Virus record (IMG/VR): IMGVR_UViG_3300030085_002431
Coordinates: 186,614-250,613 of that record
Strand: one strand, 5' to 3'
Length of the DNA stretch: 64,000 bases
Positions 41,167 to 62,453 of the stretch are shown piece by piece (positions within the stretch are counted from its first letter, which is position 1; each line of letters opens with the position of its first letter). Under the pieces are notes generated by a model, which was given only the letters and a program-made list of their open reading frames with translations, was not told the origin of the DNA and made no database searches. The translations under genes were made by a program, and so were the position numbers.

Positions 41167-41169
41167 TAT

Positions 41170-41318: not shown

Positions 41319-41350
41319 TTCCCTTCGGGGAACCTATCATATTCTTTATC

Positions 41351-41521
41351 ATGAAAATCAACTTATGGTATTCTAAGAGTATGTCGCAATGGCGGTGGAC
41401 TCTTACAGAAGAGTTTAAGAATGGAGTTACTAAACTGGAACAGCATTCTGGTCAACACCCATTTCTTAGAGATGCTATGAATGATGTCGCTAACACAGTA
41501 GAATATCTTTTGGATAAATGA
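41351..41521 (+). CDS. Conserved small cyanophage protein
   Basis: MKINLWYS..M.QWRWTL...LRDAM.DVANTVEY; start moved past the tRNA. Confidence 0.65.
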   Translation: MKINLWYSKSMSQWRWTLTEEFKNGVTKLEQHSGQHPFLRDAMNDVANTVEYLLDK

Positions 41522-42225: not shown

Positions 42226-42237
42226 GGTATGTACTAA

Positions 42238-42309
42238 TCCTCTTTAGCTCAGCGGTAGAGCGAACGACTGTTAATCGTTTGGTCCCTGGTTCGATCCCAG
42301 GAAGGGGAG
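42238..42309 (+). tRNA. tRNA-Asn(GUU)
   Basis: Cloverleaf; loop CTGTTAA. Confidence 0.93.
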
Positions 42310-42312
42310 TCT

Positions 42313-42394
42313 GTCGATGTGGCGGAATTGGTATACGCGCTGGGTTTAGGTTCCAGTGGAGCAATCCATGAAGGTTCAAGTCCTTTCATCGACA
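42313..42394 (+). tRNA. tRNA-Leu(UAG)
   Basis: Cloverleaf with variable arm; loop TTTAGGT. Confidence 0.92.
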
Positions 42395-42404
42395 CTTCTT
42401 CATT

Positions 42405-42596
42405 ATGAAATTCTCTGAATATACATTTGGGGGTCGTCCTATTACTCCCATAAATCTTCTTCTTCTCATTAGTGAAATGGAAGGTACTTACCAACATCTC
42501 AAATATATGGGATTTGAGGAAGATATGAATATTATTGATGAAATGAAGAAAAAGTACTATAAAATGTACTTCAAACTTAATAAAAAAGAAAAATGA
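42405..42596 (+). CDS. Conserved small cyanophage protein
   Basis: FGG.P....NLLLLISEMEG..QHLKYMGF. Confidence 0.6.
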   Translation: MKFSEYTFGGRPITPINLLLLISEMEGTYQHLKYMGFEEDMNIIDEMKKKYYKMYFKLNKKEK

Positions 42597-43144
42597 TTAA
42601 TAGGTGTTTTCCCAAAGATTTTTATATTAAGTTTGAAATTCCAAACTATGATGAACTTCTAGAATTTTGTGAAAAGAAAACTGAAGTAAACAATGAAAAG
42701 TTTACTTGGGGTGCTGATTGCAACCTGGATAGAGTTCCACTTAATGCTGAAGAGACTTCTTCTATTATTGGACCGTCTGTTCAACAATTTGCTAAAATTC
42801 TAGGAAAAGACTTTGGATGTTATTCATCAGACCCTTGGATAAATCACTATACAAGAGGTTCTTATCAAGAGGTTCATTCTCATTCAGAAAATGATTTTGC
42901 TTCAGTATTTCTGTTGAATGATGGAGAAGAGTTTTCTCAGTTTTACTTCTATAATGAAGTGTCAATGGCAGAATCTAGATGGAGTCATGCTGTTCCTGAG
43001 ATTGCTAATAGCCAAATATATCCTATCTTAACAGAAGGTGAAGTAATTTTCTTTCCTGGTTGGTTACAACATGGTGTTACACCACATAAAAGTGATATTG
43101 TAAGAAAAACTCTTGCATGTAATTATAATTTTGCATTTAACTAG
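42593..43144 (+). CDS. 2OG-Fe(II) oxygenase (TIGR02466-like)
   Basis: W.N.Y..G.YQEVHSH, FFPGWLQH.V, R.T...N. Confidence 0.82.
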   Translation: MINRCFPKDFYIKFEIPNYDELLEFCEKKTEVNNEKFTWGADCNLDRVPLNAEETSSIIGPSVQQFAKILGKDFGCYSSDPWINHYTRGSYQEVHSHSENDFASVFLLNDGEEFSQFYFYNEVSMAESRWSHAVPEIANSQIYPILTEGEVIFFPGWLQHGVTPHKSDIVRKTLACNYNFAFN

Positions 43145-43217
43145 GGGGGTTTAGCTCAGTTGGTAGAGCACCTGCTTTGCAAGCAGGAAGTCAGGGGTTC
43201 GAGTCCCCTAACCTCCA
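43145..43217 (+). tRNA. tRNA-Ala(UGC)
   Basis: Cloverleaf; G3-U70; loop TTTGCAA. Confidence 0.94.
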
Positions 43218-43233
43218 TGTAAAGAACAGAACT

Positions 43234-43689
43234 ATGAAAATAGAAGTAGAAGGTTCTCCTGTTCTCAGAAAGAAATCAAAAAGAGTTTCAAATATAAACA
43301 ACGATATCCGAAAGTTTTGTGCTGAGATGGCACAGACAATGAGAGATGCAAAGGGTATTGGAATTTCAGCACCCCAGGTGGGGGTATCTAAACGCATCAT
43401 AATTGTTAATGATGGAGGAAATGATTGGGTATTGATTAACCCAGAAATTATTTGGGATGATGGTAAAAGAGTTTCTTTTAATGAGGGTTGTTTAAGTGTT
43501 CCTGGTGAATATGCAGATATTCTCAGACCAGACAGGATTAGGGTGAAATATAGAGAACTATCTGGGAGACCTCAGACTGTAGACTTAGACGGTTTATTGT
43601 CAAGGATAGTGCAACATGAAATTGACCACTTAAATGGCATTCTTTTCACAGATTACTTGACTGATAGAGGAAGTGCGATTACTATATAA
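43234..43689 (+). CDS. def: Peptide deformylase
   Basis: GIGISAPQVG, EGCLSVP, QHEIDHLNG; start moved past tRNA-Ala. Confidence 0.95.
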   Translation: MKIEVEGSPVLRKKSKRVSNINNDIRKFCAEMAQTMRDAKGIGISAPQVGVSKRIIIVNDGGNDWVLINPEIIWDDGKRVSFNEGCLSVPGEYADILRPDRIRVKYRELSGRPQTVDLDGLLSRIVQHEIDHLNGILFTDYLTDRGSAITI

Positions 43690-43691
43690 AG

Positions 43692-43930
43692 TGTTCAAGA
43701 GGTTGCGAAGTCTGTTGTTTTGGACAGGGGTTCGATTCCCCTCACCTCCATTCATGGGGGTGCCATGGTTTCGACAGGGCAAAAAGGTCGTAATTGTTGA
43801 CGGGACATAAACATAGATGCAAACACATCTGAAACCGCAGCAAATAACATTGTTGCATTCTCCCGCAGCACCGTTGCTGCCTGAATGGGGGATGGGGGAT
43901 AAGTCTTCCTTCTAATCCAATAGACTCTTG
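43692..43930 (+). ncRNA. ssrA: Circularly permuted (two-piece) tmRNA
   Basis: T-arm/acceptor 3' half (43722-43750) precedes 5' half GGGGGTG (43756); G3-U70 and A73; tag (A)ANNIVAFSRSTVAA* ending 43884; TTGACT-17-TACTAT promoter. Confidence 0.9.
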
Positions 43931-43952
43931 GGGGTGAGATGCCCCTCTTTTT
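43930..43952 (+). terminator. Terminator after tmRNA
   Basis: GGGGGT-GAGAT-GCCCCT hairpin followed by a U-tract. Confidence 0.6.
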
Positions 43953-43993
43953 GTATAAATACTCCAGAGTTAATTAAACTTAGGATACTTTTT

Positions 43994-44161
43994 ATGAAAT
44001 CTTTAGTCGCAAAGGGTGCATCCAACGTAGCACCATTCGCAGCAGCATCTGCGGTCGCAATCTTTAGTGCCATTATTGGATTTGGTTTCTATCATGGGGC
44101 ATTCCACATGAATGGAAACAGCACCCATTGCCATGCAGAAGGAGTATGCCATAACCACTGA
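43994..44161 (+). CDS. Small membrane protein with His/Cys-rich C-terminus
   Basis: TATAAATA upstream; TM helix, then HCHAEGVCHNH. Confidence 0.55.
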   Translation: MKSLVAKGASNVAPFAAASAVAIFSAIIGFGFYHGAFHMNGNSTHCHAEGVCHNH

Positions 44162-44282
44162 TTATGAGTAAAACTATTATTATTGCCTTGATTGCATCTG
44201 CTGTCAGTATTACTACCTGGGAATGGATGCACATTGTTTATGGAGTTGATGAACTACCACAACAAACTATAGGAGTAAAGAA

Positions 44283-44498
44283 ATGAGCAGATTTAGAGAC
44301 CTATTTGAAGGTGCAGCACCAGCACCACCAGAAGTTTTTGATGCACCTGCTGAATCAGCAGAACTAACCCCACCTCCAGCACCTGGAACCATTAAAGAAG
44401 AGGTATTTGGGGAAGCAGCAGCACCTCCAGCAGTAGAGGTAACTGAACCAGAAGCAGCACCAGAAGCAACACCAGAACCAAGAACATTTGGTATGTGA
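44283..44498 (+). CDS. Pro/Ala/Glu-rich small protein
   Basis: AGGAG RBS; MSRF.DL start. Confidence 0.55.
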   Translation: MSRFRDLFEGAAPAPPEVFDAPAESAELTPPPAPGTIKEEVFGEAAAPPAVEVTEPEAAPEATPEPRTFGM

Positions 44499-44520
44499 TG
44501 ACAGTTGGGTAACTGTCCAC
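44498..44520 (+). promoter_or_regulatory. Early-promoter palindrome copy 6
   Basis: ATGACA-N10-TGTCCAC, then TGCTATGATTACTAGGTAAT. Confidence 0.65.
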
Positions 44521-44568
44521 TGATACCCCCACTACAACCGAGACGTGCTATGATTACTAGGTAATCAA

Positions 44569-44769
44569 ATGAAGGGCATGTCTCGGATTTTTATTGAAGG
44601 GAAACAGTACGAACACATCAACGATGACATCCATGATGGGTGGTGGTTGATTCCTGAAGATGATGTTTTTGAGTCTATGGATGATGTTCTGGAAGATGAA
44701 TTTGAATCCAAACTTGAAACTGAGGAAACAGATTGGTTTGGTGGTGAAGACCCACTAGCACAACTCTGA
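44569..44769 (+). CDS. Very acidic small early protein
   Basis: About one third D/E; directly after the promoter cassette. Confidence 0.55.
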   Translation: MKGMSRIFIEGKQYEHINDDIHDGWWLIPEDDVFESMDDVLEDEFESKLETEETDWFGGEDPLAQL

Positions 44770-44798
44770 TTTAACTTTTCGTCCTTAATTTTTTTATC

Positions 44799-45179
44799 AT
44801 GGCAACTCGTTCACGCATCGGTATTCAAATTGGTAACGATATTCTTTCTGCTTATCATCATTGGGATGGTTATCCTGAGTGGTTGGGTCGGATTCTCAAG
44901 ACACACTACAATACGAAGGAGAAAGTAGCAGAACTCATTGACGGTGGTGATATGTCTGTTGCTTGGGGTGATGACAACAAACCTGAGTATTATGCTGACC
45001 GTGGTGAGGATTGTCCTCCTTCTTATATGTCTATGGATGAGTATCTCACCAAAGATAATAATGAAGAATATGCGTACATGTTCACTAGTGCTGGATGGGT
45101 TTGCTATAATATGAATGAGTTTGACGACTCAAAGCAACCTGAATTGGTTGAAATCTCTGATGTTCCTCTTGCTGCTTAA
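44799..45179 (+). CDS. Conserved phage hypothetical protein
   Basis: MATRSRIG...YHHWDGYP...EYAY.F. Confidence 0.7.
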   Translation: MATRSRIGIQIGNDILSAYHHWDGYPEWLGRILKTHYNTKEKVAELIDGGDMSVAWGDDNKPEYYADRGEDCPPSYMSMDEYLTKDNNEEYAYMFTSAGWVCYNMNEFDDSKQPELVEISDVPLAA

Positions 45180-45784
45180 TGTTTGGATGGAAAGTTGATA
45201 GTAATACGCAAAGATTTTCGGTATTTCCTACCTTAATCTATGTCATTGATATTCCTGAGGTTGTGGAAGACCTCGGGGATATTCTTTCTGCTGTAAAGTG
45301 GAGGATGCCAGATGATGATAGGAGTGGTTCGGAATCTTTCTTTGTTCTGGATGAACATCAGCACCTGAAGGATTTATTTACTGAGAGAGTAAATACTGCG
45401 GTGTCTGAATTGCAATATACTGTTCCATTAAAACTTACAACAAGTTGGTTTTTTAGGTTAAAACCTGGAGCAAAACATCCTAAACATAAACATACCAATT
45501 CTTTTTGGAGTGCAAGTTTTTACTTTGAAAAAGGTGAAAGAGAAGCACTAAATATATCCGCACCTGCCCATGCTATCAATGTTCCAGTGAACACACAAGA
45601 TATGGGGATAGTTCCATATGGAAGATTATCTTTCCCTGCGGAATGTGGTAAACTAATTTTGTTTCCCAGTCATATGGAACACTGGGTAAATGAAAACACC
45701 TTCAATAAAACTAGACACGTTCTGGCAATGAATTTCATGCCAGATGGAGAAACTGGTTTCCTAGATTCAACTTTCACCTATTAA
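45179..45784 (+). CDS. 2OG-Fe(II) oxygenase (TIGR02466-like)
   Basis: HKHTNS..S..FY, LFPSHMEH.V, R..LAMN. Confidence 0.82.
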   Translation: MFGWKVDSNTQRFSVFPTLIYVIDIPEVVEDLGDILSAVKWRMPDDDRSGSESFFVLDEHQHLKDLFTERVNTAVSELQYTVPLKLTTSWFFRLKPGAKHPKHKHTNSFWSASFYFEKGEREALNISAPAHAINVPVNTQDMGIVPYGRLSFPAECGKLILFPSHMEHWVNENTFNKTRHVLAMNFMPDGETGFLDSTFTY

Positions 45785-45785
45785 A

Positions 45786-45986
45786 ATGACTACCAAACGT
45801 AAAATGGTCTGCGTTGACCCTCGTTCTAATGCTGCTCGTCTCCGTTTTGTGACTGAGATGAGTAAACTTCACTCTTGTTATATTGATAATGAACTTAATG
45901 GTATTCTTTACCTGACTTCTATCAATGGCAAGTATCGTTTCAGTATGAATAAGAAAGAAGATAAGAACTGGGCAGTTGTAAAGTGA
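45786..45986 (+). CDS. Conserved small cyanophage protein
   Basis: V.PRS..A..RF...M..LHSC. Confidence 0.55.
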   Translation: MTTKRKMVCVDPRSNAARLRFVTEMSKLHSCYIDNELNGILYLTSINGKYRFSMNKKEDKNWAVVK

Positions 45987-46144
45987 TTGACGAGCAAACT
46001 AGACTTATACTTGCTTTGTATCAAGTAGATAATTTAGTTGAACTTACTAAAGATAATGAATATAAACATTATCTCTACTGTAAGTTGTCATCTATTAAAT
46101 GTGAATTAGAGAGACAACTACACAACATGGTCAATCCACCAAAG

Positions 46145-46166
46145 AAGACACTTGAGTAAGTGGCAC
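46145..46166 (+). promoter_or_regulatory. Early-promoter palindrome copy 7
   Basis: AAGACA-N10-TGGCAC; AGGGGG-TTGCAAGA-CCCCCT stem over the -35. Confidence 0.6.
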
Positions 46167-46379
46167 ACAGGGGGTTGCAAGACCCCCTTTTTGATGCCAT
46201 ACTAACGGAGTAGTCAACAAGGACCACATGAATCGTCCCGAAGTTCTTCTCACTGCTGCTGATTATCTTGAGGATATTAAAGCACGGTGGGAGATTCACC
46301 AGTATGAAGTAACTAAACTGCGTGAAGACATTGCAACTTGTTTCAATGCAATCACCGATGCTGCTTACTACACATCTAC

Positions 46380-46401
46380 TGGACAATTCTGATAGTGTCA
46401 C
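46380..46401 (+). promoter_or_regulatory. Early-promoter palindrome copy 8
   Basis: TGGACA-N10-TGTCAC; GGGAGGT/ACCTCCC stem; AAGAGTCAAAG. Confidence 0.65.
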
Positions 46402-46460
46402 AGGGGAGGTTGCGGACCTCCCTTTTTCATGTATAGTTAAAGAGTCAAAGCAAACGAGAC

Positions 46461-46727
46461 ATGTTCTCAAACCTCTCTAAAATCAAACCGAAATTTCGTA
46501 CCTCTGGTCGAGTTTCTGGTAACTTTGGACGCAACAAAGTAAAAGCAGGTTCCTCTATGAAGGGAATCGGTGAAACTAATGCAAAGGTTCTAAAAATGAC
46601 GACGCAAGAAGAGTATCTTCAACGTCTCCGTGATGCTTATGGCACTACTACAAATCCACGGATGAGGGAGTTCATCTATCTCGAAATCCGTAAGATTATG
46701 GTACAACGGGGACAATGGGTAAAGTGA
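46461..46727 (+). CDS. Basic small early protein
   Basis: 88 aa directly after the promoter cassette. Confidence 0.6.
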   Translation: MFSNLSKIKPKFRTSGRVSGNFGRNKVKAGSSMKGIGETNAKVLKMTTQEEYLQRLRDAYGTTTNPRMREFIYLEIRKIMVQRGQWVK

Positions 46728-46900
46728 TTTATTCCTATGCAGAACTTGAATCGACTTATTATCAATTCAAGAATCTGATTGATAGAGAACGTAAACTTCA
46801 TGAAATGGACATGATGATTAACCCCGAGCATCTTGATTTGCTTGAGTATGAAATCATGCCATTGATGGAGGAGATTGTTTTCTACGACCCCACTCCTTGA
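46715..46900 (+). CDS. Hypothetical protein
   Basis: Small acidic ORF ending YDPTP. Confidence 0.45.
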   Translation: MGKVIYSYAELESTYYQFKNLIDRERKLHEMDMMINPEHLDLLEYEIMPLMEEIVFYDPTP

Positions 46901-46986
46901 ATACATAATTATCATGCTTGACAAAAAACAAGCATGATAGTATTATCAAACCATAATCAACTACTTTATTAGATTATCACTGTAAG

Positions 46987-47214
46987 ATGACTTACGATAA
47001 CAAAACTCTTCAAGAGTACGAGAAAGAACTCAAAACTCAAAAGAAGAAGTTCGACAAGATGACCAAGCAATACAAGAAGTGTACTAGTAATTATCAAGCA
47101 GAAATGCTCTATGATGATTTGACTATCTTGAGTGAAGATATTCGACAACTACAACTTATTGTTAAAGAATTGCGTGAGGAAAAACGACTTGCAAAAGTTC
47201 TTGAAGATGCCTGA
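46987..47214 (+). CDS. Coiled-coil hypothetical protein
   Basis: 75 aa; TTGACA promoter upstream. Confidence 0.5.
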   Translation: MTYDNKTLQEYEKELKTQKKKFDKMTKQYKKCTSNYQAEMLYDDLTILSEDIRQLQLIVKELREEKRLAKVLEDA

Positions 47215-47524
47215 TTTGTATAGTGAAGTTCTGAAATACGAACGTAACTTTCCATCTTATTTCGTTATGTCAAAATACACAAAAGAATCATTTGCGGAAG
47301 AAATCTCCCGCAATTCTCAACTTCGGGATGATTTTCTGCAAGAATATGTTGATGATATTGTCTTCAACCTATCAATCAAAGAGTTGAGAAAAAGTTATTC
47401 AAACACTCTTTTGAATCTTCTGTATCAAGATTGTGATGCAGACCAAGAGGTTCAAATTGTTGAAGAAGTTGCAGACGTTCATCCACACATTCTCAGAAGA
47501 TTTGGAGTAGATGTGACAGTGTAA
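47207..47524 (+). CDS. Hypothetical protein
   Basis: Start moved to an ATG overlapping the upstream stop. Confidence 0.45.
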   Translation: MPDLYSEVLKYERNFPSYFVMSKYTKESFAEEISRNSQLRDDFLQEYVDDIVFNLSIKELRKSYSNTLLNLLYQDCDADQEVQIVEEVADVHPHILRRFGVDVTV

Positions 47525-47534
47525 CCACTGACAC
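47513..47534 (+). promoter_or_regulatory. Early-promoter palindrome copy 9
   Basis: GTGACA-N10-TGACAC, then TTTACA...TGCTAAGAT. Confidence 0.65.
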
Positions 47535-47598
47535 AAAACACTTTACAAACTAGTCACCATCTGCTAAGATGTATTCATCAAGTCAAGGAGATTCCCCC

Positions 47599-47748
47599 AT
47601 GGTTGACACCTGCACTCGTCACGATGATTATGAGACTTTTGCTGTAAAGTATCTGGGAGTTGACTATGAAGATTTTGTAAATCTTCAGTTGGGTTGCTCC
47701 GAAGATGATGATGATTTCACTGAGTATTATTACAATACTTCTCGGTGA
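47599..47748 (+). CDS. Very acidic small protein (49 aa), paralog of 24876-25019
   Basis: AAGGAG RBS; HDDYETFAVKYLGVDYEDF; followed by a hairpin terminator. Confidence 0.6.
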   Translation: MVDTCTRHDDYETFAVKYLGVDYEDFVNLQLGCSEDDDDFTEYYYNTSR

Positions 47749-47779
47749 TAATTAGTAGGGGTTAATTACCCCTCTATTT

Positions 47780-47853
47780 GTCTTGTTAGCTCAGATGGAT
47801 AGAGCAACTGCCTTCTAAGCAGTCGGTCGAAGGTTCGAGTCCTTCACAAGACG
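47780..47853 (+). tRNA. tRNA-Arg(UCU)
   Basis: Cloverleaf; loop CTTCTAA. Confidence 0.93.
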
Positions 47854-49869: not shown

Positions 49870-50169
49870 ATGTCTGCATCTGTTGAAGTAATCGAAGAAT
49901 TTATCCGCAATCAAATTGCAAAACCTACTGCTAATCCTACGATTGTTCGTAGTTGGTGGAGGTATGCGAATGAGAGTGGTTATTTTCACATGCCACCATC
50001 TCATGCTCCTGGTTTCTGCCGAAATGCAAAACAGGCAGGAAAGAATATCAATGAAGAATTTGGTTTTGATGTAATCAAAATGCACTTCTATGGTATTTGG
50101 AAGAACAATGAGACCAAGAACTTCTCACCATGGGAGAAGGACCATGCCAGTTGTGAAGGTGTCCACTAA
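49870..50169 (+). CDS. Hypothetical protein
   Basis: 99 aa ORF. Confidence 0.45.
   Translation: MSASVEVIEEFIRNQIAKPTANPTIVRSWWRYANESGYFHMPPSHAPGFCRNAKQAGKNINEEFGFDVIKMHFYGIWKNNETKNFSPWEKDHASCEGVH
50144..50166 (+). promoter_or_regulatory. Early-promoter palindrome copy 11
   Basis: ATGCCA-N10-TGTCCACTAAACCCCCCA; GAGTCAAAG. Confidence 0.7.
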
Positions 50170-50223
50170 ACCCCCCACTGGGGTCAAAACCGTGTATTCT
50201 AAGAGAGTCAAAGGAACAGACCA

Positions 50224-51639: not shown

Positions 51640-52875
51640 TTGTTCACACTTCTCCCCTACCAGCAACGTGCCCTCGATGCAGTGCAAACTAATCGCAAGG
51701 GTTCTGTATTTGTTCCTACTGGTGGTGGCAAAACTGTTATCATGATGGAAGATGCAAAGCAACGTATTGCACGGGCATCTAAACCCCTCACCTTCCTGAT
51801 TGTTGCTCCTCGCATTCTCCTCGCAAACCAACTTTGTGGTGAGTTTGAAGAGTACCTAGATAATAAAGATATTCACTATATGCACTGCCATAGTGGAGAA
51901 ACTCACCACTTCAAGAGTACAAATCCAGAACTCATCAAACTGTTTGCAAATACTGCAAAAGTTGGTGGTGAGCATTGCTTCATTTTTACTACCTACAATT
52001 CTATTCATAAAGTCAATGATTCAAAGATTGACGTTGATGTTGTTTACTTTGACGAAGCACATCACTGCGTCAAGAAAAACAACTTTGTGGGTATTGCTCA
52101 GACTAGTGCAGACGCAAATAATTCTTATTTCTTTACTGCTACTCCTAAGTATCATGGTGGAGTTGAATCCATGAACAATACCTCTGTTTATGGTAACAAC
52201 ATCATCTCTATTCCTGCTCAAGAATTGATTGATGCAGGTAGCATTATTCCCCCTAAAGTTGTATCCTATGAATCACAAGACACCCGCAGTCGTGAAAATG
52301 CTGCGTGGGTCGATGGTAAGAATGTCATTGGCATTTTGCGTGGGATTACTGACACCGATGCTCCTAAAGTTCTTGTTGCATCTCCAAGCAGCAAGTGCAT
52401 CTGGGAAATGTTCACTGAAACCGATGTTCTTATTCAACTGAAAGACATGGGTTACACCATCATGCACATCACATCTAAGCATGGTGCTTACATCGACAAA
52501 ACCAAAGTTTCCCGTGAAGTATTCTTTGAGAAGATGTCTGAGTTCGGTGCTGACCCTGATAAAAAGTTCATTGTCTTCCACTATTCTATTCTGTCCGAAG
52601 GTATGAACGTGCATGGTCTGACTCATTGCATCATGCTCCGCAATCTTCCTGTGATTGAGATGGCACAGACTGTCGGTCGTGTTATCCGTATGCACCGAGA
52701 TGACCGCAAAGCAATCGCAGAAGGTAAAATGAAAGCAGGTGAGTTTGCTTTCTATAAGAAACCCTGTGGTCACGTTGTTATTCCTACCAACAACAACTAT
52801 GGAGACCGTATCATCAAGCAACTGCAAAACGTTGTTGATACTATCTTTGTCAAGGGTGAAGTTCCGATTGCATAA
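51640..52875 (+). CDS. SF2 DEAH-box helicase (type III Res-like)
   Basis: PTGGGKT, DEAHH, TAT, QTVGRVIR; TTG start after GAGG. Confidence 0.88.
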   Translation: MFTLLPYQQRALDAVQTNRKGSVFVPTGGGKTVIMMEDAKQRIARASKPLTFLIVAPRILLANQLCGEFEEYLDNKDIHYMHCHSGETHHFKSTNPELIKLFANTAKVGGEHCFIFTTYNSIHKVNDSKIDVDVVYFDEAHHCVKKNNFVGIAQTSADANNSYFFTATPKYHGGVESMNNTSVYGNNIISIPAQELIDAGSIIPPKVVSYESQDTRSRENAAWVDGKNVIGILRGITDTDAPKVLVASPSSKCIWEMFTETDVLIQLKDMGYTIMHITSKHGAYIDKTKVSREVFFEKMSEFGADPDKKFIVFHYSILSEGMNVHGLTHCIMLRNLPVIEMAQTVGRVIRMHRDDRKAIAEGKMKAGEFAFYKKPCGHVVIPTNNNYGDRIIKQLQNVVDTIFVKGEVPIA

Positions 52876-53066: not shown

Positions 53067-53088
53067 ATGCCAGTCCTGGAACTGGTCT
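53067..53088 (+). promoter_or_regulatory. Early-promoter palindrome copy 13 (degenerate)
   Basis: ATGCCA-N10-TGGTCT, then TTGCCC...TATAGT. Confidence 0.55.
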
Positions 53089-53145
53089 AATCCCCCTTGC
53101 CCTTCTTAGGGTGAGGGGTTATAGTGTATTCATACACAGGAACGC

Positions 53146-53736
53146 ATGAAACTTACCACCAACGAAGTTGCAGCAAAACTGAAAGTTACTGATTTTTCTG
53201 CATTTCAAAAACCTGGCAAGAATAAGGGTGCCCGTGGTCAACTGCTGGAGACTGCTCTGGGTATTAGTAATTCCTCTGACTTGACTGATTTGATTGACGG
53301 TGAACTGAAATCTTTCACTCAGGGAGAATCTATTGCTGTCACTCAAATTAAACATTGCCTGCATGAAATTATCAGGGATGAAGTTGGATTTTATGATAGC
53401 AAAGTTGGTGAGAAACTGAGACAAACCATTTATGTTGGTTTCACACGTTCTAATGATTATATTGGAACTGCAACAATTAGTTTCGACAGTTGCCCTAAGC
53501 ATTTCTGTGAACTCGCAGAAGATTATGAATATATTTGTAATGAAATCCGCAATCGTTACAATAACAGTCAAGAACTGAGTACGATTACTGGTCCTAATAA
53601 ATTGCTTCAAATCCGTACTAAAGCAAGCAAGAATAAGTGGGGACAATACACTCCTTTGGTGTATAATGATAAAGTTATGAAAGATAAAAATATGGCATTT
53701 TATCTCTGCACACAATTCGGTAAAACTATTATTTGA
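53146..53736 (+). CDS. MutH/Sau3AI-family endonuclease
   Basis: NKG..GQLLE.ALG, D..DGELK, LQIRTK, AFY. Confidence 0.8.
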   Translation: MKLTTNEVAAKLKVTDFSAFQKPGKNKGARGQLLETALGISNSSDLTDLIDGELKSFTQGESIAVTQIKHCLHEIIRDEVGFYDSKVGEKLRQTIYVGFTRSNDYIGTATISFDSCPKHFCELAEDYEYICNEIRNRYNNSQELSTITGPNKLLQIRTKASKNKWGQYTPLVYNDKVMKDKNMAFYLCTQFGKTII

Positions 53737-53740
53737 GAAC

Positions 53741-54562
53741 ATGAGAAAACCATTCCTTAAATGGGCAGGTGGTAAAACTAAAGTCCTGCAACATATTTTG
53801 CCCCTTATTGGTAATGTTGACCACTTCATTGAACCATTCGCAGGTTCTATGTCTGTGGGGTTAAATGTACCTGCAAAAGTGTGTGTTCTGAATGATGTTA
53901 ATGGGCACATCATCCAACTTTACCAGCATCTTATTGGTGAGGGTGAGGACTTTATTAACTACTGCGAATCCTTTTTTGTGGATGGTAATGTATCTGATTT
54001 GTATTATGAGAGAAGAACACTATTCAATGAAACTGAGGATAGTAGAGAAAGGTCTGCATTGTTTGTTTATTTGAATCGACATGGATTCAATGGACTGACA
54101 AGATATAATAAGAGTGGTGAATATAATGTTCCTTTTGGTAAGTATAAAAAACCATACTTTCCGAGAGACGAAATGATGGAATTTAGATATAATATGCAGA
54201 GAAAAATGCTTCTTAGAATGACAGCATTTGATTTTGCAGACCCAGTGTTGTATAAGAATCTTTCTGCTGGTAGTGTAGTTTATTGTGACCCACCTTATAT
54301 TCCGTTGAATGAAACTTCCAACTTCACGGCATATTCTACTGATGGGTTTACTAATAACGACCAAATTAGATTGAAGCAACTTGCACTTAATCTGAGAAGA
54401 CAGGGAGCAAAAGTAATCATTAGTAATCACGATGTACCTGCTGCCCGTGAATTGTACTCTGACGCATCTAGAATCATCGAAATTAACGTGAGTCGCAGTG
54501 TGAGTGCTAAGGGTGGTTCTAGAGGTAAAGTGGGGGAAATCCTAGCAGTTTATGAACCCTGA
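53741..54562 (+). CDS. dam: Dam-like DNA adenine methyltransferase
   Basis: FLKWAGGK, EPFAGS, YLNRHGFNGL.RYN..G.YNVPFG, YCDPPY. Confidence 0.92.
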   Translation: MRKPFLKWAGGKTKVLQHILPLIGNVDHFIEPFAGSMSVGLNVPAKVCVLNDVNGHIIQLYQHLIGEGEDFINYCESFFVDGNVSDLYYERRTLFNETEDSRERSALFVYLNRHGFNGLTRYNKSGEYNVPFGKYKKPYFPRDEMMEFRYNMQRKMLLRMTAFDFADPVLYKNLSAGSVVYCDPPYIPLNETSNFTAYSTDGFTNNDQIRLKQLALNLRRQGAKVIISNHDVPAARELYSDASRIIEINVSRSVSAKGGSRGKVGEILAVYEP

Positions 54563-54563
54563 T

Positions 54564-54610
54564 GTGCCACATGTTCTAGTGGCACAGTAAATGAGCACAG
54601 ACCCCAAAAT
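54564..54610 (+). repeat. Palindrome copy 14 plus 35-bp exact repeat of 58139-58173
   Basis: GTGCCA-N10-TGGCAC; CTAGTGGCACAGTAAATGAGCACAGACCCCAAAAT identical at both loci. Confidence 0.9.
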
Positions 54611-54828
54611 TTGCTATTCTATAGAAGTCGTCAGGGGATTGCCCACATGGTCACTAAAACACTCACATTTGAAGAAGAGACCGATTTGGTTTCATCCCTT
54701 TACTCTGCCGTTGCTTATTTTAAGCAGTTGGAAGAAGAATCCATCAATAACAAAGATTATTGGAAGAAACGGATACAAGAAGCACAAAACGTTGCTGATA
54801 AATTTTACGCAGAACTGAAGGCATCACT

Positions 54829-55032
54829 GTGAACGCACTGACTGAAATGGAAACTATTCTCAACCTCCAGGATTGTCTGACGGAGAAGCAACTTACTGCT
54901 CTCCGTGACATGGTAGAGTTTTATCGAGATTTTCAAGAAGAGTTGTATGATTATCCTGCTGAAGAAAATCTTTTCACAGGATCACAACTCGAACTGTTTC
55001 AAATCTTCGATGTCAATCGTATTGACAGTTGA
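54829..55032 (+). CDS. Acidic hypothetical protein
   Basis: 67 aa; GTGA coupled. Confidence 0.5.
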   Translation: MNALTEMETILNLQDCLTEKQLTALRDMVEFYRDFQEELYDYPAEENLFTGSQLELFQIFDVNRIDS

Positions 55033-55250
55033 GATTTGAAATCATATAATTACTTCTGAAGTTTATTTTCAAGACTAAAACAATCAATGGAGAACGCAGT
55101 CAAGAACCAGATGCACACATCCGTAAATGTTACCATCTATTTTAATGCTGAAATGGATGATTTGGATGTGAAAGATTTTGTAGAATCTTCTCTTGAAAAG
55201 TATTGTCATCCTGATCATATTGTTCAGGATTATGAATACTGGCACTCCAA

Positions 55251-55302
55251 TGAGTCTTGAGTGACGCAAGGACAGTTCTAACACTGTCCACTAAACCCCC
55301 CA
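55251..55302 (+). repeat. Palindrome copy 15 within a 52-bp repeat of 57039-57090
   Basis: 49/52 identical to 57039-57090; AGGACA-N10-TGTCCAC. Confidence 0.9.
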
Positions 55303-55350
55303 TGGCACCCTTCTGGGTGCTATCATTACGAAGTAATCAATCAAAGGCAC

Positions 55351-55752
55351 ATGTCTGTCACAACCCGACTCAAGGATTCCACCATTGATGTCATTCATGA
55401 ACTGGTTGAAAATAACTATCATGATGGTGACATTTATGAGTTCATCAACACCTACGGTGAAGATGCACTGGAAACTTGCTACGAGGATTATGTAGAACTC
55501 GGAGAATCTTATTCCTTCGAGGCAGTTGATGTTTTCTGTGAAGAGTTTTCAATCGAAGAGATTGGTAACTTCCAAGATGCTTATTATGGTGAATATGAAA
55601 CACCTGCAATTTTTGCAGAGCAATTCACTGATGACACAACTGCAATGGAACTTCCTAACTATGTTGTTGTTGATTGGGAAGCAACTTGGGAGTGCAATCT
55701 TCGGCATGATTTTATCTGGTCCGAAGGATTTGTTTTCAACCGCAACTTCTGA
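55351..55752 (+). CDS. ArdA-like antirestriction (DNA-mimic) protein
   Basis: Highly acidic; AY.GEY....FAEQ...P.YV.VDWE..W...L..DF C-terminal pattern. Confidence 0.65.
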   Translation: MSVTTRLKDSTIDVIHELVENNYHDGDIYEFINTYGEDALETCYEDYVELGESYSFEAVDVFCEEFSIEEIGNFQDAYYGEYETPAIFAEQFTDDTTAMELPNYVVVDWEATWECNLRHDFIWSEGFVFNRNF

Positions 55753-55959
55753 TTGATGCAATTTTTAATTACTGAGATTGAGTTTGATTTCACTGATGCT
55801 TTTGACGGTGAACCAAGTGCAGAATCTAAAAAAGAATTATATGATGATGTACTTGGTGAAGTGTGGGAAGCACATGATGAAGAAGATTTAATTGATGAAA
55901 TATCTGCTTGCACGGGTTGGTGCATTAACTCTATTGATTACAAACACATTCTAAAATGA
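55753..55959 (+). CDS. Acidic small protein
   Basis: IEFDF...WEA.DEEDL.DEI...TGWCI. Confidence 0.55.
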   Translation: MMQFLITEIEFDFTDAFDGEPSAESKKELYDDVLGEVWEAHDEEDLIDEISACTGWCINSIDYKHILK

Positions 55960-56168
55960 TGACTCTCTCCAAAGACAAACTGCAACACATTAAAGAGAAC
56001 TATGCACAACTAATCCTTGACGGGATGGATATGCGTTCCCTTGAAGCATTTGCAATGGAATCTATTCTCCAAAACATGGAAATGTGGGATGAGAAAGATA
56101 TTAAGGAAGAAGTTCTTGATTACTATGGGGAAGAAACCTGGAACGATTTGCTAGAAGTAGATGACTAA
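55956..56168 (+). CDS. Acidic small protein
   Basis: Y...I.DGMD...L motif; ATGA coupled. Confidence 0.55.
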   Translation: MMTLSKDKLQHIKENYAQLILDGMDMRSLEAFAMESILQNMEMWDEKDIKEEVLDYYGEETWNDLLEVDD

Positions 56169-56484
56169 TGCCTGGGCACTTTTGTGGGACGAAATTTATC
56201 CTAACGGTGAAATGAACAAACCAAAACCATTTCAATCTAATCAATTTGAGGTTGAGAAACAACGAGCAATGTCTAACATTGAAGATGTAACTAACTCTCA
56301 AGAGGATTGGGAAGATTTCTGGTATAATTCTGAATCTGAGGGTAAAGATGTTCTTGAAGAAAATGTAGAGGAGGATAATACTCCCAAAACATTTTCTTAT
56401 GATGGTTGGATTCCCAAAGAAAAGTTTGGTATTAAAAATACAAAACAGTTCTTTGAGAAAAATGGAAAACCATTTATGGGTTAA
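56161..56484 (+). CDS. Hypothetical protein
   Basis: 107 aa, acidic. Confidence 0.5.
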   Translation: MTNAWALLWDEIYPNGEMNKPKPFQSNQFEVEKQRAMSNIEDVTNSQEDWEDFWYNSESEGKDVLEENVEEDNTPKTFSYDGWIPKEKFGIKNTKQFFEKNGKPFMG

Positions 56485-56687
56485 TCTCAACAGTTTCACA
56501 TAAACAGTCGATGAGACTGCACGGCATGACCTAAGACACCTGCATGACCAAAATGCAGGTTTTTTAGTTTTTGACACCTTTCAAACTCTAGTCATAGCAA
56601 GGGTTCTCATTTGTGACACATGTGAGAATTGCTGTCCTGGTCACTTCCCGCATAAATTAAAGAGTAAAGAATTTTTTATTTTATTGT

Positions 56688-57041
56688 ATGGAAGACAATG
56701 ATTTAAGTCAATTTCCTTCACAACTTTTCTGTGAATCTGAATTACTTGGTGTTAGTTTCACGTTTGGTCCTAATCCTAATCCCTATAGGAGAAGTCCAAA
56801 GATGTATTATATTGAATTAAAGGATAAATCATTTAACTCAGAATTTCCTGATGATTATACTGAGGTTAATTATGAAACAATTCATCCAGATAATTTTGAT
56901 GAAGTTGTCAGATGTAGGGAGAAATTAAAATCAGAGTGGTGGAAAAGATATCAATATATTGATGAAAATCCAGATATATTTGGTGCTGGTGCTGATTTTG
57001 GGGAAACTGATATTAACCTCGAAACGGATGAAATTGGTTGA
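56688..57041 (+). CDS. Hypothetical protein
   Basis: 117 aa, AT-rich. Confidence 0.5.
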   Translation: MEDNDLSQFPSQLFCESELLGVSFTFGPNPNPYRRSPKMYYIELKDKSFNSEFPDDYTEVNYETIHPDNFDEVVRCREKLKSEWWKRYQYIDENPDIFGAGADFGETDINLETDEIG

Positions 57042-57090
57042 GTCTTAAGTGACTCAAGGACAGTTCTAGCACTGTCCACTAAACCCCCCA
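57039..57090 (+). repeat. Palindrome copy 16 within a 52-bp repeat of 55251-55302
   Basis: AGGACA-N10-TGTCCACTAAACCCCCCA. Confidence 0.9.
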
Positions 57091-57139
57091 CACGGGGCAA
57101 AATCGTGTATTGTATAAGAGTCAAAGAGATTCGCACTAA

Positions 57140-57391
57140 ATGCAACTCACATCCAAAGATGGTCACATGGTTGTTGATTTTTATTCCCTGAAGTTTGCTG
57201 ATGGGACTGAGCACAATCGTTTGGCACTTAAGGTTGTTACTTTCTGTGGTAAAACCCAATCGAAAAGTTACATCAACATCAAAGATGTAAAACGTGAGGT
57301 AGAATCTCGTATTGAGGGTTATGGTTACAAACAAACCCGAATCAATAAAGAACCTCAATTCTTTAACTCAGCAATGGCATGTGCCTGCTGA
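57140..57391 (+). CDS. Conserved cyanophage early protein
   Basis: MQLTSK...VVDFY start; directly after the promoter cassette. Confidence 0.6.
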   Translation: MQLTSKDGHMVVDFYSLKFADGTEHNRLALKVVTFCGKTQSKSYINIKDVKREVESRIEGYGYKQTRINKEPQFFNSAMACAC

Positions 57392-57551
57392 TATTAACTG
57401 GGCAGTACAGTATTTAACGTAAGACCCAGCATGAGATGGCATACCCGTTACGGTCACTGTGCTGACGTTCCTGAGTGAACTTCCGTGGGTCGGTTAATCC
57501 TGTCAGCAACATCTCTTTAGTACACAAACACAAACCACATTTAATTTCATT

Positions 57552-57722
57552 ATGTCTGCAACTGTTGAATTTTCTCGTGATGTCATGCTGGGTATGCTCC
57601 GCAAGGGCAAAAACGGCAAGGAAATCATGGACATTCTCAACGTGATTGCTCCTGAGTCTGATGGTGATTCTGCTGCCTCTGATTATGGTCAGGGCAACGG
57701 ATTCGACCCGATTGACTTCTGA
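57552..57722 (+). CDS. Small protein (56 aa, not in ORF track)
   Basis: MSATVEFSRDVMLGMLRKG...; followed by a GGGGAGTT/AACTCCCC terminator. Confidence 0.6.
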   Translation: MSATVEFSRDVMLGMLRKGKNGKEIMDILNVIAPESDGDSAASDYGQGNGFDPIDF

Positions 57723-57772
57723 TTGAGTCGGGGAGTTAATAACTCCCCACATTTGTTTTTTTGTTTTATATC

Positions 57773-58111
57773 ATGAATCAAACTGAACCCACCGAATTGC
57801 AATGCTCCCAAGTTTTTTGGGTAGTTGGTGCTGCTCAAAGACTTGCTAATCTTGGTTTACTCGATGAAGTACCGATTGGGATTGCAATGGAGAAGAATGA
57901 TGAATGGATTGAACTAGATAAAACTCGGCATTTTCTTTTTGAAAATGACTTTGAGATAGCATCAATCTTTTATGCTCTTGTTACTAATGACGGGAAACTA
58001 GAAGATAATTATGATGAGAGTACTTTTGACAATATGACTCAAGTTCTCATTGATTACAAAGACAATCGAATCGAGTTGGTTCGATGTGCATTAGAGCACT
58101 GTCTTGTGTGA
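57773..58111 (+). CDS. Hypothetical protein
   Basis: ATG start within the track ORF. Confidence 0.5.
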   Translation: MNQTEPTELQCSQVFWVVGAAQRLANLGLLDEVPIGIAMEKNDEWIELDKTRHFLFENDFEIASIFYALVTNDGKLEDNYDESTFDNMTQVLIDYKDNRIELVRCALEHCLV

Positions 58112-58126
58112 GTCTAGTGCTCATGT

Positions 58127-58173
58127 GTGACACATGTACTAGTGGCACAGTAAATGAGCACAGACCCCAAAAT
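58127..58173 (+). repeat. Palindrome copy 17 plus 35-bp exact repeat of 54576-54610
   Basis: GTGACA-N10-TGGCAC. Confidence 0.9.
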
Positions 58174-58208
58174 CTGCTATCATTACAAAGTAATCAATCA
58201 GGGACCGC

Positions 58209-59874: not shown

Positions 59875-59908
59875 CCTACCTGAAATCTGTCTAGACTAGT
59901 ATATCTCA

Positions 59909-59930
59909 AAACCACTTGTTCAACTGGCAC
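59909..59930 (+). promoter_or_regulatory. Early-promoter palindrome copy 18
   Basis: AAACCA-N10-TGGCAC, then TGCTATCATTACTATGTAAT. Confidence 0.6.
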
Positions 59931-60494
59931 AAACACGACCCCAAACCCCTGAAAAATTTGCTATCATTACTATGTAATGAGAAAGGGAGTTCAACTTGAG
60001 CACTGCTGACAAACTTGAGAAAGCATTTTATTTGAATCTGATTCGATTGGTTGATGAAGTTCAGGGCAATGTTAAATTGCAATCACAAGTTACCTACAAA
60101 CAAAAAAGTGCCTGGGTAAAACAAACTAAGTCTCAGAAAACAAAAAAAGATGCACTTTCTAAAATCAAATGACTAGCATCAGAACAACCTACGACATCAA
60201 AACAAGAGAGAAACTTTACACTGTGATTCATAATCACAAAGTTATTCTCACTCCACACATTACCAACGCAATTCTCTACGTTCACAAATGCAAGTAATTG
60301 ACATCAACATCATGCAATTCTGCCAAGAGCAAGAAGCAGATTTAGAAATGGTTCTTGATTATCTTAACTCTCAAATTGATAATCCTACACAGGAACAAAT
60401 TGATGAGGCATGTAAGATATATGATGATTATCTTGAAGATGTAGACTTTATCAATTCTCTCTGATATAATAACCAAGTAATCCAATTAAACATA

Positions 60495-60767
60495 ATGCTT
60501 AAGGCAATTACATCACTATTACTATCAGTTACCTTATGGGTACAAGTTCCACAATGGAATGATGATTGGAGTAATTGTGCAGTAGATGTTCCTGACACTA
60601 GTTGTCATTGGTACATTGTAAATGCCGATAATACTTTTGGTGAAGGATTCGATTGGGAAACTGCACCATGGTATTCGATTGAAGGATTACAAGACATTGC
60701 TAATCTTCATGATGAGGTAATTAGTAATGGTCACACTTATACAGTTGAAGCATTACAAAATCAATGA
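60495..60767 (+). CDS. Conserved secreted/membrane-anchored small protein
   Basis: Signal-like N-terminus; Trp-rich CAVDVPD..CHWY. Confidence 0.6.
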   Translation: MLKAITSLLLSVTLWVQVPQWNDDWSNCAVDVPDTSCHWYIVNADNTFGEGFDWETAPWYSIEGLQDIANLHDEVISNGHTYTVEALQNQ

Positions 60768-61069: not shown

Positions 61070-62080
61070 AAAGTGCATCTGTGGAAAAACTTGTGGAAAA
61101 ACAATCATTAAATAAATGGTTAAAAAAACATAGTTGCGTGTTTTATGTTTTCCACAGAAGGTGTTGAAAAAGTATATAAATACCCTGTTTTATCTTCGTT
61201 ATTATGTTCTAAACCCCTCTGGTTATTGTTATCTAAGACCGCAGTATATCATGAGTTGACAAAAAAGTCAAGAAAATTTCTGAAACTTTTTGAGTCTCAC
61301 ACATATTATTCGTCTGATATAAGACTCAACAAAACTGTAAGATTTTATGAGTCCTCTGAGTCTCACTGATTCGTCCATTCTTATGCGAAACTCACTGGTC
61401 TCAGAGAACTTATGAGTCTCAGACCACTCGAAAATTCGTCCACTGGACACAGTAGTCTCATTGTTTTGCGTGTAGACTACTAGGGTGGTTTTGAGGGAGG
61501 GAAGTATTACACAGCACTATGTGATAATAATTACACAGTGAGTTTGTATTAGTTTTCCACAGGCAAAGTATTAGTTATCCACAGACCCTGTGGAAAAGTA
61601 TTATAAACCTGTGGAAAACTTTATACCTGGGGGAGGGGTTTATATTACTAATACACAGTGAGTTTCTGATTGTTTATAAACACCAGTACTACTCACAAAC
61701 ACTCCGAGGGTTTCTAATACTTTACAGATTGCCCTTCGTGTATTATAATAAAACAGTGTTGTGTAATTATAATTAAGTAGTACTGTTTAATTCTTATACC
61801 CACGGGGGGGTTATTAATAACAATTACTTAGTGAGTTCGTTATTGTTATTATACAGCACTAAATGACAGTAACCCTCGGGGGGGTTAGGTTTTTTATAAA
61901 AACCGATGGGTCCCCCTAACCTACAAAAGTATGCATCCACGAGACCTTTACCCCGCATATAAAAATTTTTCCGAGGGGAAAAACGGGTCTCCGAGGTCCG
62001 TTCAAGAAAAAAAATTCCGAGGGGAAAAAATAGGTTAAAAACCCTGTGAGTGCTATATAACGGAGAATAAAAATTTCTAA
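61070..62080. other. Putative replication origin with seven DnaA boxes
   Basis: ~1 kb without a credible gene; TT(T/A)TCCACA at 61080, 61092, 61148, 61553, 61575, 61589, 61610; AT-rich tract. Confidence 0.6.
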
Positions 62081-62453
62081 GAATGACCGAAGAAGAGAAG
62101 GAGTTACTCATCGAGTGCATTCAATTCCGTTTACAGCACGACAAGTCTTTAAATAGTAATGAAGTATTACGTGAAGATTTGGAAGAATTGCTCTTTAAAG
62201 TAGAGGATATTGATGACTACGTATGACATAAAAGTCAAAGGTTTAACAGTAATGGAGAGAGTTACTCCAGAGCAACTCACACAGAGTATGAAAGATGCTC
62301 AAATGATTGTGTGGTTGAGAGGGGGTAAAATGGAAGACGTTGAGTATGTAATAAATACAAAGTCTTCTTGAGACGAAAAAAAACCCCGTCCGCAACGTAG
62401 TTGCATTTGATGTGAAGGGGTGATATAATTATAGAGTTGGAATTTACATTTTT

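What the first reader, a model, noticed from the sequence alone, without database searches (positions are those of the whole stretch)
54564..58200. Promoter cassettes are mosaics of exchangeable halves, suggesting a gene-shuffling system
Seen: 54576-54610 is identical to 58139-58173 (35 bp), and 55251-55302 matches 57039-57090 (49/52). The right halves assort differently. Copies 15 and 17 share TGCTATCATTAC(G/A)AAGTAATCAATCA. Copy 16 instead shares GTGTATT...GAGTCAAAG with copy 11, and the GAGTCAAAG part with copy 8. Known: promoter-stem-loop (PeSL) cassettes mediate modular shuffling in some T4-type phages. Inference: recombination between these repeats excises, inserts or reorders 0.5-3 kb early-gene modules (e.g. 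the ArdA-like module, the MutH-Dam module).
Basis: partly seen in the sequence, partly recalled or inferred. Interest (0 to 1): 0.7.

Follow-up and report, generated by a model that had tools for sequence, protein, structure and literature searches.

The report
Shuffling-prone promoter cassettes in a cyanophage
The repeats are real regulatory cassettes between the early genes of a 250-kb T4-like marine cyanophage; their parts are conserved across the phage family and do act as crossover points for swapping gene modules, but they account for only a minority of the gene shuffling seen.

Summary
Observation confirmed. 54576-54610 equals 58139-58173 (35/35; shuffles give at most 20), 55251-55302 matches 57039-57090 (49/52), and the right halves assort differently.

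The window is the last 64 kb of a complete 250,613-bp T4-like cyanomyovirus from marine metagenomes.

Each cassette has a palindrome, a 28-31 nt spacer, an extended -10, a leader and a start codon. The palindrome is GTGnCA-N10-TGnCAC or GGACAGT-N6-ACTGTCC. There is no -35 and no T-run. The architecture is rigid in about 290 instances across relatives and also occurs in cultured Syn19 and S-SM1, so much of the identity reflects function.

Recombination at cassettes is nevertheless real.
- Chimeric palindromes occur at orthologous sites.
- One slot is empty in one relative, holds an IceA-like nuclease plus methylase in others, and holds MutH+Dam here, with the crossover inside the palindrome.
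- Two indels against close relatives (46.2/46.4 kb and 56.6/57.07 kb) are bounded by cassettes.

Among 85 indels between close family members, 28% of breakpoints lie in cassettes against 13% of gene junctions. Twelve events have both ends in cassettes; about 58% involve none.

Verdict: a PeSL-like mechanism in a new sequence form, contributory rather than dominant. No site-specific recombinase was found; UvsX and UvsY are present.

The parts
54563..54646 (+). Palindrome GTGCCA-N10-TGGCAC at 54564-54585; spacer; TGC + TATTCT -10 at 54612-54620; leader; ATG at 54647.
   Evidence: Hairpin -13.7 kcal/mol, z -3.5. A metatranscriptome contig starts at 54627.
55251..55350 (+). Cassette upstream of the ArdA-like gene (copy 15). 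Palindrome GGACAGT-N6-ACTGTCC at 55270-55289; C-run; TGC + TATCAT at 55318-55326; ATTAC-N3-GTAAT leader palindrome; ATG at 55351.
   Evidence: Hairpin -10.5 kcal/mol, z -4.6.
56600..56687 (+). Degenerate cassette upstream of gene 56688-57041. It holds a TGTGACACATGT half-palindrome and an ATAAAT..AAAGAGTAAAG right half. It follows a canonical terminator at 56538-56560.
   Evidence: It is the left breakpoint (56626) of the indel against L189 and of a joint in run X14.
57039..57139 (+). Cassette upstream of gene 57140-57391 (copy 16). Two hairpins, with the palindrome at 57058-57077; -10 TATTGT at 57108-57113; leader ..AAGAGTCAAAG; ATG at 57140.
   Evidence: The right half is identical over 28 nt to a Syn19 cassette. 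Breakpoint 57071 is seen in L189 and L187.
58112..58208 (+). Cassette upstream of the DUF2786/DUF7168 gene (copy 17). Mismatched palindrome GTGACA-N10-TGGCAC at 58127-58148; TGC + TATCAT at 58175-58183; ATG at 58209.
   Evidence: Fold is no better than shuffles. The site is conserved at the orthologous position in relatives. Similarity to L006 starts at 58121.
50150..50223 (+). Cassette (copy 11) that shares the 3' half-site, C-run and the GTGTATTCTA..GAGTCAAAG right half with copy 16.
46160..46460 (+). Two cassettes (46160-46227 and 46393-46460, the latter being copy 8) flanking gene 46228-46392. Relative L097 has a single cassette and no gene.
53146..54562 (+). MutH-like (53146-53736) plus Dam methylase (53741-54562) module. 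It lies between a cassette at about 53068-53145 and the one at 54563.
   Evidence: Pfam and PHROG matches. Content of this slot varies among relatives.
56688..57041 (+). 117-aa gene that is absent from close relative L189, together with the right half of the cassette before it and the left half of the cassette after it.
57140..57391 (+). 83-aa gene (phrog_500). It lies directly after the ArdA-like gene in most relatives but is relocated here behind its own cassette.
57773..58111 (+). 112-aa gene that lies before the DUF2786 gene here but after it in most relatives. A metagenome contig skips it (57723 to 58122).
59900..59995 (+). Cassette with half-site TGGCAC and TGC + TATCAT + ATTACTATGTAAT. 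It is the right breakpoint (59902) of the L006 indel.

Best explanation
These are composite transcription-control cassettes of a T4-like cyanophage. Each has a sequence-specific palindrome at a fixed distance upstream of an extended -10 promoter that lacks a -35. The palindrome is most likely a protein-binding site and can also fold as a hairpin at the end of the upstream transcript. It is followed by one of a few conserved leaders, a ribosome-binding site and the start codon.

Each sub-element is kept nearly invariant by function across the phage family. Many copies lie in direct orientation between small early genes, so they offer 12-130 nt of homology. The phage's own homologous recombination (inferred: UvsX/UvsY) occasionally crosses over within them. 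This yields chimeric cassettes and inserts, deletes or replaces units of the form 'right half + gene(s) + left half'. That is the PeSL mechanism in a different sequence form. It is one contributor to gene flux, not the main one.

Shown: the anatomy, its conservation, the chimeras, and cassette-bounded indels. Inferred: promoter activity, the binding factor, and the recombination enzymes.
For: Anatomy and rigidity.
- The spacing between palindrome arms is 10 nt in 288 of 296 unique instances.
- The distance from the 3' arm to TGnTAnnnT is 29-31 nt in 212 of the 217 instances that have such a -10; 79 have none within 60 nt.
- The arms are near-invariant, with little covariation.
- In the own genome, half-site plus -10 occurs 22 times on the + strand against about 8 in shuffles.

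Spread. The same cassettes occur in cultured Syn19 and S-SM1 and in at least 120 IMG/VR stretches.

Chimeras. 5' arms of one type are joined to 3' arms of the other type at the orthologous DUF2786 promoter. Metagenome contigs join the 54.6-kb left half to the 57.1-kb right half.

Cassette-bounded events.
- L097 has one cassette where the window has two plus a gene.
- L189 lacks 56627-57070.
- L049 against L055 is a 1.2-kb module with the crossover inside the ATGTGCCA arm.
- S-SM1 gene 070 is inserted between the left and right halves of the Syn19 helicase cassette.

Statistics. 48 of 170 breakpoints lie in cassette windows against 13% of junctions. Twelve of 85 events have both ends in cassettes, against about 1.4 expected if ends were independent. 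Eight of the 10 events with at least 30 nt of flanking repeat are cassette-to-cassette.

Enzymes. UvsX and UvsY are present.
Against: - Window against its closest relatives alone shows no enrichment: about 7 of 38 breakpoints, against about 21% of junctions carrying a cassette (hand tally).
- About 58% of family-wide events involve no cassette.
- The events are not phylogenetically independent, and my gene calls are crude.
- Most relatives are metagenome assemblies, which can mis-join at repeats. However, many states recur in independent contigs, and the pattern holds in two cultured isolates.
- Promoter activity rests on sequence plus a few RNA contig ends.
- The sigma-70 consensus scan does not call these cassettes, and the palindromes lack a T-run.
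Confidence: 0.68

Rival explanations
1. The cassettes are purely regulatory. A few interchangeable functional variants of each sub-element exist, and their combinations reflect regulatory classes and common descent. Gene flux happens at gene boundaries by illegitimate recombination, and cassettes sit near breakpoints only because they mark the ends of transcription units.
For: - Sub-elements are conserved family-wide, including 28-nt identity with Syn19.
- The halves do not assort freely: the GGGTGGAGGG leader occurs only with the A-type arm, 44 to 0.
- In zero-overlap events, the right end abuts a cassette start in 13 of 36 cases and the left end in 1 of 36. This suggests genes are appended at operon ends.
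- There is no enrichment in the window's own close comparisons.
Against: - Chimeric palindromes that destroy the dyad occur at an orthologous site.
- Filled and empty sites have the crossover inside the arm.
- Eight of 10 long-overlap events (30-132 nt) are cassette-to-cassette.
- Events with both ends in cassettes are about 8-fold over expectation.
Confidence: 0.22
2. The cassettes belong to a dedicated, integron-like site-specific shuffling system in which the fixed-spacing palindrome is the recombination site of a specialised recombinase.
For: The palindrome has invariant arms and fixed spacing. Some crossovers lie within the arm or the loop.
Against: - No tyrosine or serine recombinase is present in the complete genome.
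- Crossovers are spread over the arm, loop, spacer, -10 and leader.
- The palindrome keeps a fixed distance to the -10, as a promoter element would.
Confidence: 0.05
3. The apparent mosaics and cassette breakpoints are artefacts of metagenome assemblers joining different phages at shared repeats.
For: Nearly all relatives are assembled contigs. Depth spikes at cassettes show that they are shared by many co-occurring phages.
Against: - The window's arrangement recurs in more than 13 independent contigs from different samples and assemblers.
- Both states of the 1.2-kb slot recur in several contigs.
- The same mosaic is seen between cultured isolates Syn19 and S-SM1.
Confidence: 0.05

Closest known systems
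PeSLs (promoter-early stem-loops) of T4-type phages RB49/phi1, T4/PST and KVP40/nt-1 (Arbiol 2010, PMC2839356; Comeau 2014, PMC4122927)
   Same: - Layout: stem-loop directly upstream of an early promoter, then Shine-Dalgarno sequence and start codon, repeated between small ORFs of hyperplastic regions.
- One-cassette versus two-cassettes-plus-gene topologies between close relatives.
- Chimeric elements with crossovers in the loop or between stem-loop and promoter.
- Only some indels are explained by the elements.
   Different: - No -35 and no AT-rich upstream tract; an extended -10 instead.
- The stem-loop is a sequence-invariant, fixed-spacing palindrome at a fixed distance from the -10. It lacks a T-run, so it looks like a protein site rather than a generic terminator.
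- The host is a cyanobacterium.
- Minicircles and promoter or terminator activity were not tested.
Intergenic cassettes of cultured cyanomyoviruses Syn19 (GU071106) and S-SM1 (GU071094)
   Same: They share the palindrome, spacing, -10 and leaders; one right half is identical over 28 nt. The helicase promoter keeps its right half but has different left halves in the two isolates.
   Different: Their genomes are 175 kb, and the helicase is about 52% identical to this phage's. The papers I could read do not describe this element. A 2010 review calls early and middle transcription control in cyanomyoviruses unclear (PMC2984593), and Puxty 2015 found no dense PeSLs in S-PM2 (PMC4503421).
Integron gene cassettes (attC sites)
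   Same: Imperfect palindromes bound exchangeable gene cassettes.
   Different: No integrase was found, crossover positions are scattered, the elements carry their own promoters, and the palindrome is tied to the -10.
Promoter-bearing intergenic repeats of halovirus HF2 (PMC8707807, abstract only) and conserved boundary sequences of lambdoid phages (own knowledge)
   Same: Repeated regulatory sequences at gene boundaries offer homology for mosaic exchange.
   Different: The sequences and hosts are unrelated. No comparison was made here.

Membership tests
PeSL (Arbiol 2010; Comeau 2014) | Stem-loop immediately upstream of the promoter | tested here: met
   Folds of -10.5 to -13.7 kcal/mol (z -3.5 to -4.6) for the 54.6, 55.3 and 57.1 kb copies. 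The 58.1 kb copy is mismatched (z 0).
PeSL (Arbiol 2010; Comeau 2014) | Sigma-70-like early promoter with -35 and -10 about 17 nt apart | tested here: not met
   The consensus scan calls none of the four cassettes. A TGn-extended -10 is present, but no -35; the palindrome's 3' arm lies 29-31 nt upstream instead.
PeSL (Arbiol 2010; Comeau 2014) | The stem-loop functions as a terminator and the element as a promoter | not testable with these tools
   There is no T-run after the palindromes. A few RNA contig ends at 54627, 55343 and 58204-58207 fit the predicted starts.
PeSL (Arbiol 2010; Comeau 2014) | Shine-Dalgarno sequence and start codon at the 3' end; located among small ORFs of a hyperplastic region | tested here: met
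   Purine-rich tracts lie 5-12 nt before each ATG. The cassettes are confined to the small-gene region. Gene content is hypervariable among relatives.
PeSL (Arbiol 2010; Comeau 2014) | Indels between close relatives bounded by the elements; chimeric elements | tested here: met
   Enrichment is about 2.2-fold, and 12 of 85 events have both ends in cassettes. It is a minority of events.
PeSL (Arbiol 2010; Comeau 2014) | Excised minicircles carrying gene plus chimeric element | not testable with these tools
   Only assembled contigs of public runs were available.
Integron-like site-specific cassette system | Dedicated tyrosine or serine recombinase | tested here: not met
   No PF00589 or PF00239 match in the complete 250-kb record.
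Integron-like site-specific cassette system | Crossover at one fixed position of the site | tested here: not met
   Crossovers occur in the 5' arm, loop, spacer, -10 and leader.
T4-like cyanomyovirus | T4-type recombination genes and cyanophage marker genes | tested here: met
   UvsX and UvsY are present. All 419 helicase matches are to Synechococcus/Prochlorococcus phage or cyanophage records, plus 5 listed as 'Marine'. CobS is present. The source is marine metagenomes.

The most novel reading that the evidence does not exclude
The GTGCCA-N10-TGGCAC palindrome, held 29-31 nt upstream of an extended -10 in hundreds of cyanomyovirus intergenic regions, is the operator of a still unidentified host or phage transcription factor. 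That factor would define the poorly understood early/middle promoter class of these phages. Because the operator is multi-copy and invariant, it would double as the preferred crossover point for acquiring anti-defence and other accessory modules, coupling regulation to gene flux.
Probability: 0.35. Interest if true: 0.7.

Novelty: new variant of a known kind. Interest (0 to 1): 0.48.

Why it matters
Cyanomyoviruses are among the most abundant ocean viruses, and their hyperplastic regions hold host-takeover and anti-defence genes. This work shows that a rigid, family-wide promoter cassette is also a recombination substrate, and it measures how much it contributes. About 14% of indels have both ends in cassettes, about 40% have at least one end there, and the rest occur at tight stop/start junctions. 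That extends the PeSL idea to cyanophages on a quantitative footing.

The conserved palindrome also gives a concrete handle on early and middle transcription control in these phages, which the one review I could read described as unclear. It can be tested in cultured Syn19 or S-SM1.

Tried and rejected
- Adjacency conservation across 58 helicase-anchored relatives (61-77% aa identity) was saturated: nearly every junction is broken, so it is uninformative.
- Window against its closest relatives alone gave too few events and no enrichment.
- I tested whether cassettes begin with stop codons in all three frames, as seen at 55251 and 57039. This is not general: 10% of palindromes against 7.5% of controls.
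- Covariation in the palindrome arms is weak: A-variants mostly face G. I therefore do not call it a selected RNA helix.
- The ATTAC-N3-GTAAT leader palindrome is not a stable RNA hairpin.
- Rfam gave no family for the cassettes.
- Shared G/T variants in the 3' arms of the 54.6 and 58.1 kb copies (window against L189) hint at gene conversion, but this rests on one SNP.
- Syn2 against Syn19 has no indels and is uninformative.
- RNA contigs gave only a few ends and no joints.
- The exact pattern for the B-type left half found only 2 IMG/VR contigs.
- I did not scan host genomes for the palindrome, because chance matches would swamp 14 specified bases.
Full report
**What is there.** The window is the last 64 kb of a 250,613-bp IMG/VR virus record rated complete. 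Relative L005 reads across the window end into the record start, so the record is circularly permuted. All 419 phage records matching the helicase at 51742-52875 are Synechococcus/Prochlorococcus phage or cyanophage records, plus 5 listed as 'Marine', at up to 54% identity. CobS, UvsX and UvsY are present, and the DNA occurs in many marine metagenomes. This is a large T4-like cyanomyovirus. From about 21 kb onward all genes are on the + strand, mostly small and tightly packed.

**The observation.** Every stated match is present. The exact 35-mer exceeds the 15-20 nt seen in shuffles.

**Anatomy.** Right-aligning the intergenic regions shows a common plan: the stop codon of the upstream gene, a palindrome, a C-rich spacer, an extended -10 (TGnTAnnnT), a leader of about 25 nt with a purine-rich tract, and ATG.
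- Type A palindromes are GTGnCA-N10-TGnCAC, at 54564 and 58127.
- Type B palindromes are GGACAGT-N6-ACTGTCC, at 55270 and 57058.

Across relatives the A arms are 10 nt apart in 288 of 296 unique instances. The 3' arm ends 29-31 nt before the -10 hexamer in 212 of the 217 instances that have such a -10; 79 have none within 60 nt. The arms barely vary and show little compensatory change. Three of the four local palindromes would fold well as RNA (z -3.5 to -4.6), but the 58.1 kb copy would not. None is followed by a T-run, and the sigma-70 scan finds no -35. The left half therefore behaves like a sequence-specific promoter-upstream site, not a generic terminator. RNA contig ends at 54627, 55343 and 58204-58207 fit the predicted starts, but this is thin evidence.

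**Conservation.** At the orthologous site upstream of DUF2786 homologues, most relatives keep the A palindrome and the following TAAA.G.GCACAG tract, although the protein is only about 64% identical. Cultured Syn19 and S-SM1 carry the same cassettes, and one Syn19 right half is identical over 28 nt to the 57.1 kb copy. TGTGCCA-N10-TGGCACA occurs in at least 120 IMG/VR stretches, up to seven per 9 kb. Near-identity of halves is thus largely purifying selection and is not by itself evidence of recent exchange.

**Mosaicism.** A contingency table of left and right types over the family shows many combinations but not free assortment. At the DUF2786 site some relatives carry the B-like type. Others (L062, L079, L080, L085) join an A 5' arm to a B 3' arm, which destroys the dyad; this indicates a crossover in the loop. 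Metagenome contigs fuse the 54.6 kb left half to the 57.1 kb right half and to other right halves. Depth spikes at cassettes show they are shared by co-occurring phages.

**Breakpoints.** Comparing the window with its closest relatives (L097, L189, L186, L187, L181-184, L005, L006) gives two classes.
- Cassette-bounded events:
  - 46160|46396. L097 has one cassette where the window has two plus a gene.
  - 56626|57071. L189 lacks a right half, gene 56688-57041 and the next left half; the same joint appears in a contig of run X14.
  - The ends at 58121, 59902 and 44489.
- Events at tight junctions: about 30 other breakpoints, for example the gains or losses of genes 45179-45784, 55753-55959 and 60495-60767.

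My hand tally is about 7 of 38 breakpoints at cassettes, against about 21% of junctions carrying a cassette. That is no enrichment.

An all-against-all comparison of family loci (flanks at least 88% identical) gave 85 clustered indels.
- 48 of 170 breakpoints lie in cassette windows, against 13% of gene junctions (binomial p about 1e-7; events are not independent).
- 36 events have one or both ends in a cassette.
- 12 events have both ends in cassettes, against about 1.4 expected if ends were independent.
- Of the 10 events flanked by at least 30 nt of direct repeat, 8 are cassette-to-cassette.
- The remainder use 0-12 nt of microhomology, typically TGATTATG or AATGA stop/start overlaps.

**The MutH-Dam slot.** After the helicase and a conserved 54-aa ORF, three states occur:
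- L055 has a single cassette.
- L049, L052 and L043 have a 1.2-kb IceA-like nuclease plus methylase-like pair between two cassettes, with the crossover inside the ATGTGCCA arm.
- The window, L056, L042, L045 and L066 have MutH plus Dam.

The ArdA-like gene, by contrast, holds a conserved family position. The local rearrangements in the window's lineage are instead the relocation of genes 57140 and 57773.

**Cultured isolates.** In S-SM1, gene 070 sits between the Syn19-type left half and a second cassette whose right half matches the Syn19 helicase promoter. The inserted unit is 'right half + gene + left half'. A circle carrying one chimeric cassette and integrating by a single crossover would give exactly this. 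Assembly artefacts therefore cannot explain the pattern.

**Mechanism and classification.** No tyrosine or serine recombinase is present, and crossover positions are scattered. UvsX and UvsY are present. Homologous recombination at repeated regulatory cassettes, the PeSL mechanism, is the best fit. Strict PeSL composition (-35 and terminator) is not met, so I file this as a new variant. Puxty 2015 found no dense PeSLs in the cyanophage S-PM2. A 2010 review calls early and middle control in cyanomyoviruses unclear. I could not read Doron 2016 or Weigele 2007, which may describe the motif.

Noticed in passing
window 43661-43945; tRNAs at 40976-47853: A cyanobacterial-type (permuted) tmRNA gene scores 133.6 bits against RF01851. 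It lies inside the phage's tRNA cluster of seven tRNAs.
   Followed up: no
window 55753-55959: This 68-aa gene (phrog_2460) has about 60-fold higher contig depth than its neighbours in marine metagenomes. It sits in at least three different contexts in relatives (L003, L005, most of the family). It is joined by overlapping stop/start codons with no cassette, and it is absent from L189.
   Followed up: partly
window 55321-55340, 58178-58197, 59962-59977, 36807-36822, 44549-44564, 23518-23533: One promoter class carries a palindrome, (G)ATTAC-N3-GTAAT(C), that overlaps the -10 and the predicted start. It is conserved in 92 unique instances in relatives and is not a stable RNA hairpin. It looks like an operator.
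   Followed up: partly
window 61080-61618: All six copies of TGTGGAAAA in the window, on both strands, cluster in a 540-bp gene-poor stretch. The same motif cluster is present at the syntenic place in L189 and Syn19. This may be iterons of a replication origin or a regulatory region.
   Followed up: partly
L049 11702-12870 vs window 53146-54562: The same genomic slot holds alternative nuclease-plus-methylase pairs in different relatives: an IceA-like nuclease with a methylase-like protein, or MutH with Dam. In one relative it is empty.
   Followed up: yes
window 57392-57551: A long 5' region precedes gene 57552. Contigs from two independent metatranscriptomes start at 57423, 7 nt after a TATTTA box. 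L189 and a metagenome contig lack 57433-57517.
   Followed up: partly
window 46924-46952, 55022-55050, 62406-62434: A second promoter class with canonical -35 and -10 spaced 17 nt apart (TTGACA/TATTAT, TTGACA/TATAAT, TTGCAT/TATAAT) coexists with the palindrome class.
   Followed up: no
window 54591-54818 vs 54647-54832: Two overlapping open frames follow the 54.6 kb cassette. The frame starting at 54647 fits the cassette layout and the gene calls of public contigs. The 54591 frame would start inside the cassette.
   Followed up: partly
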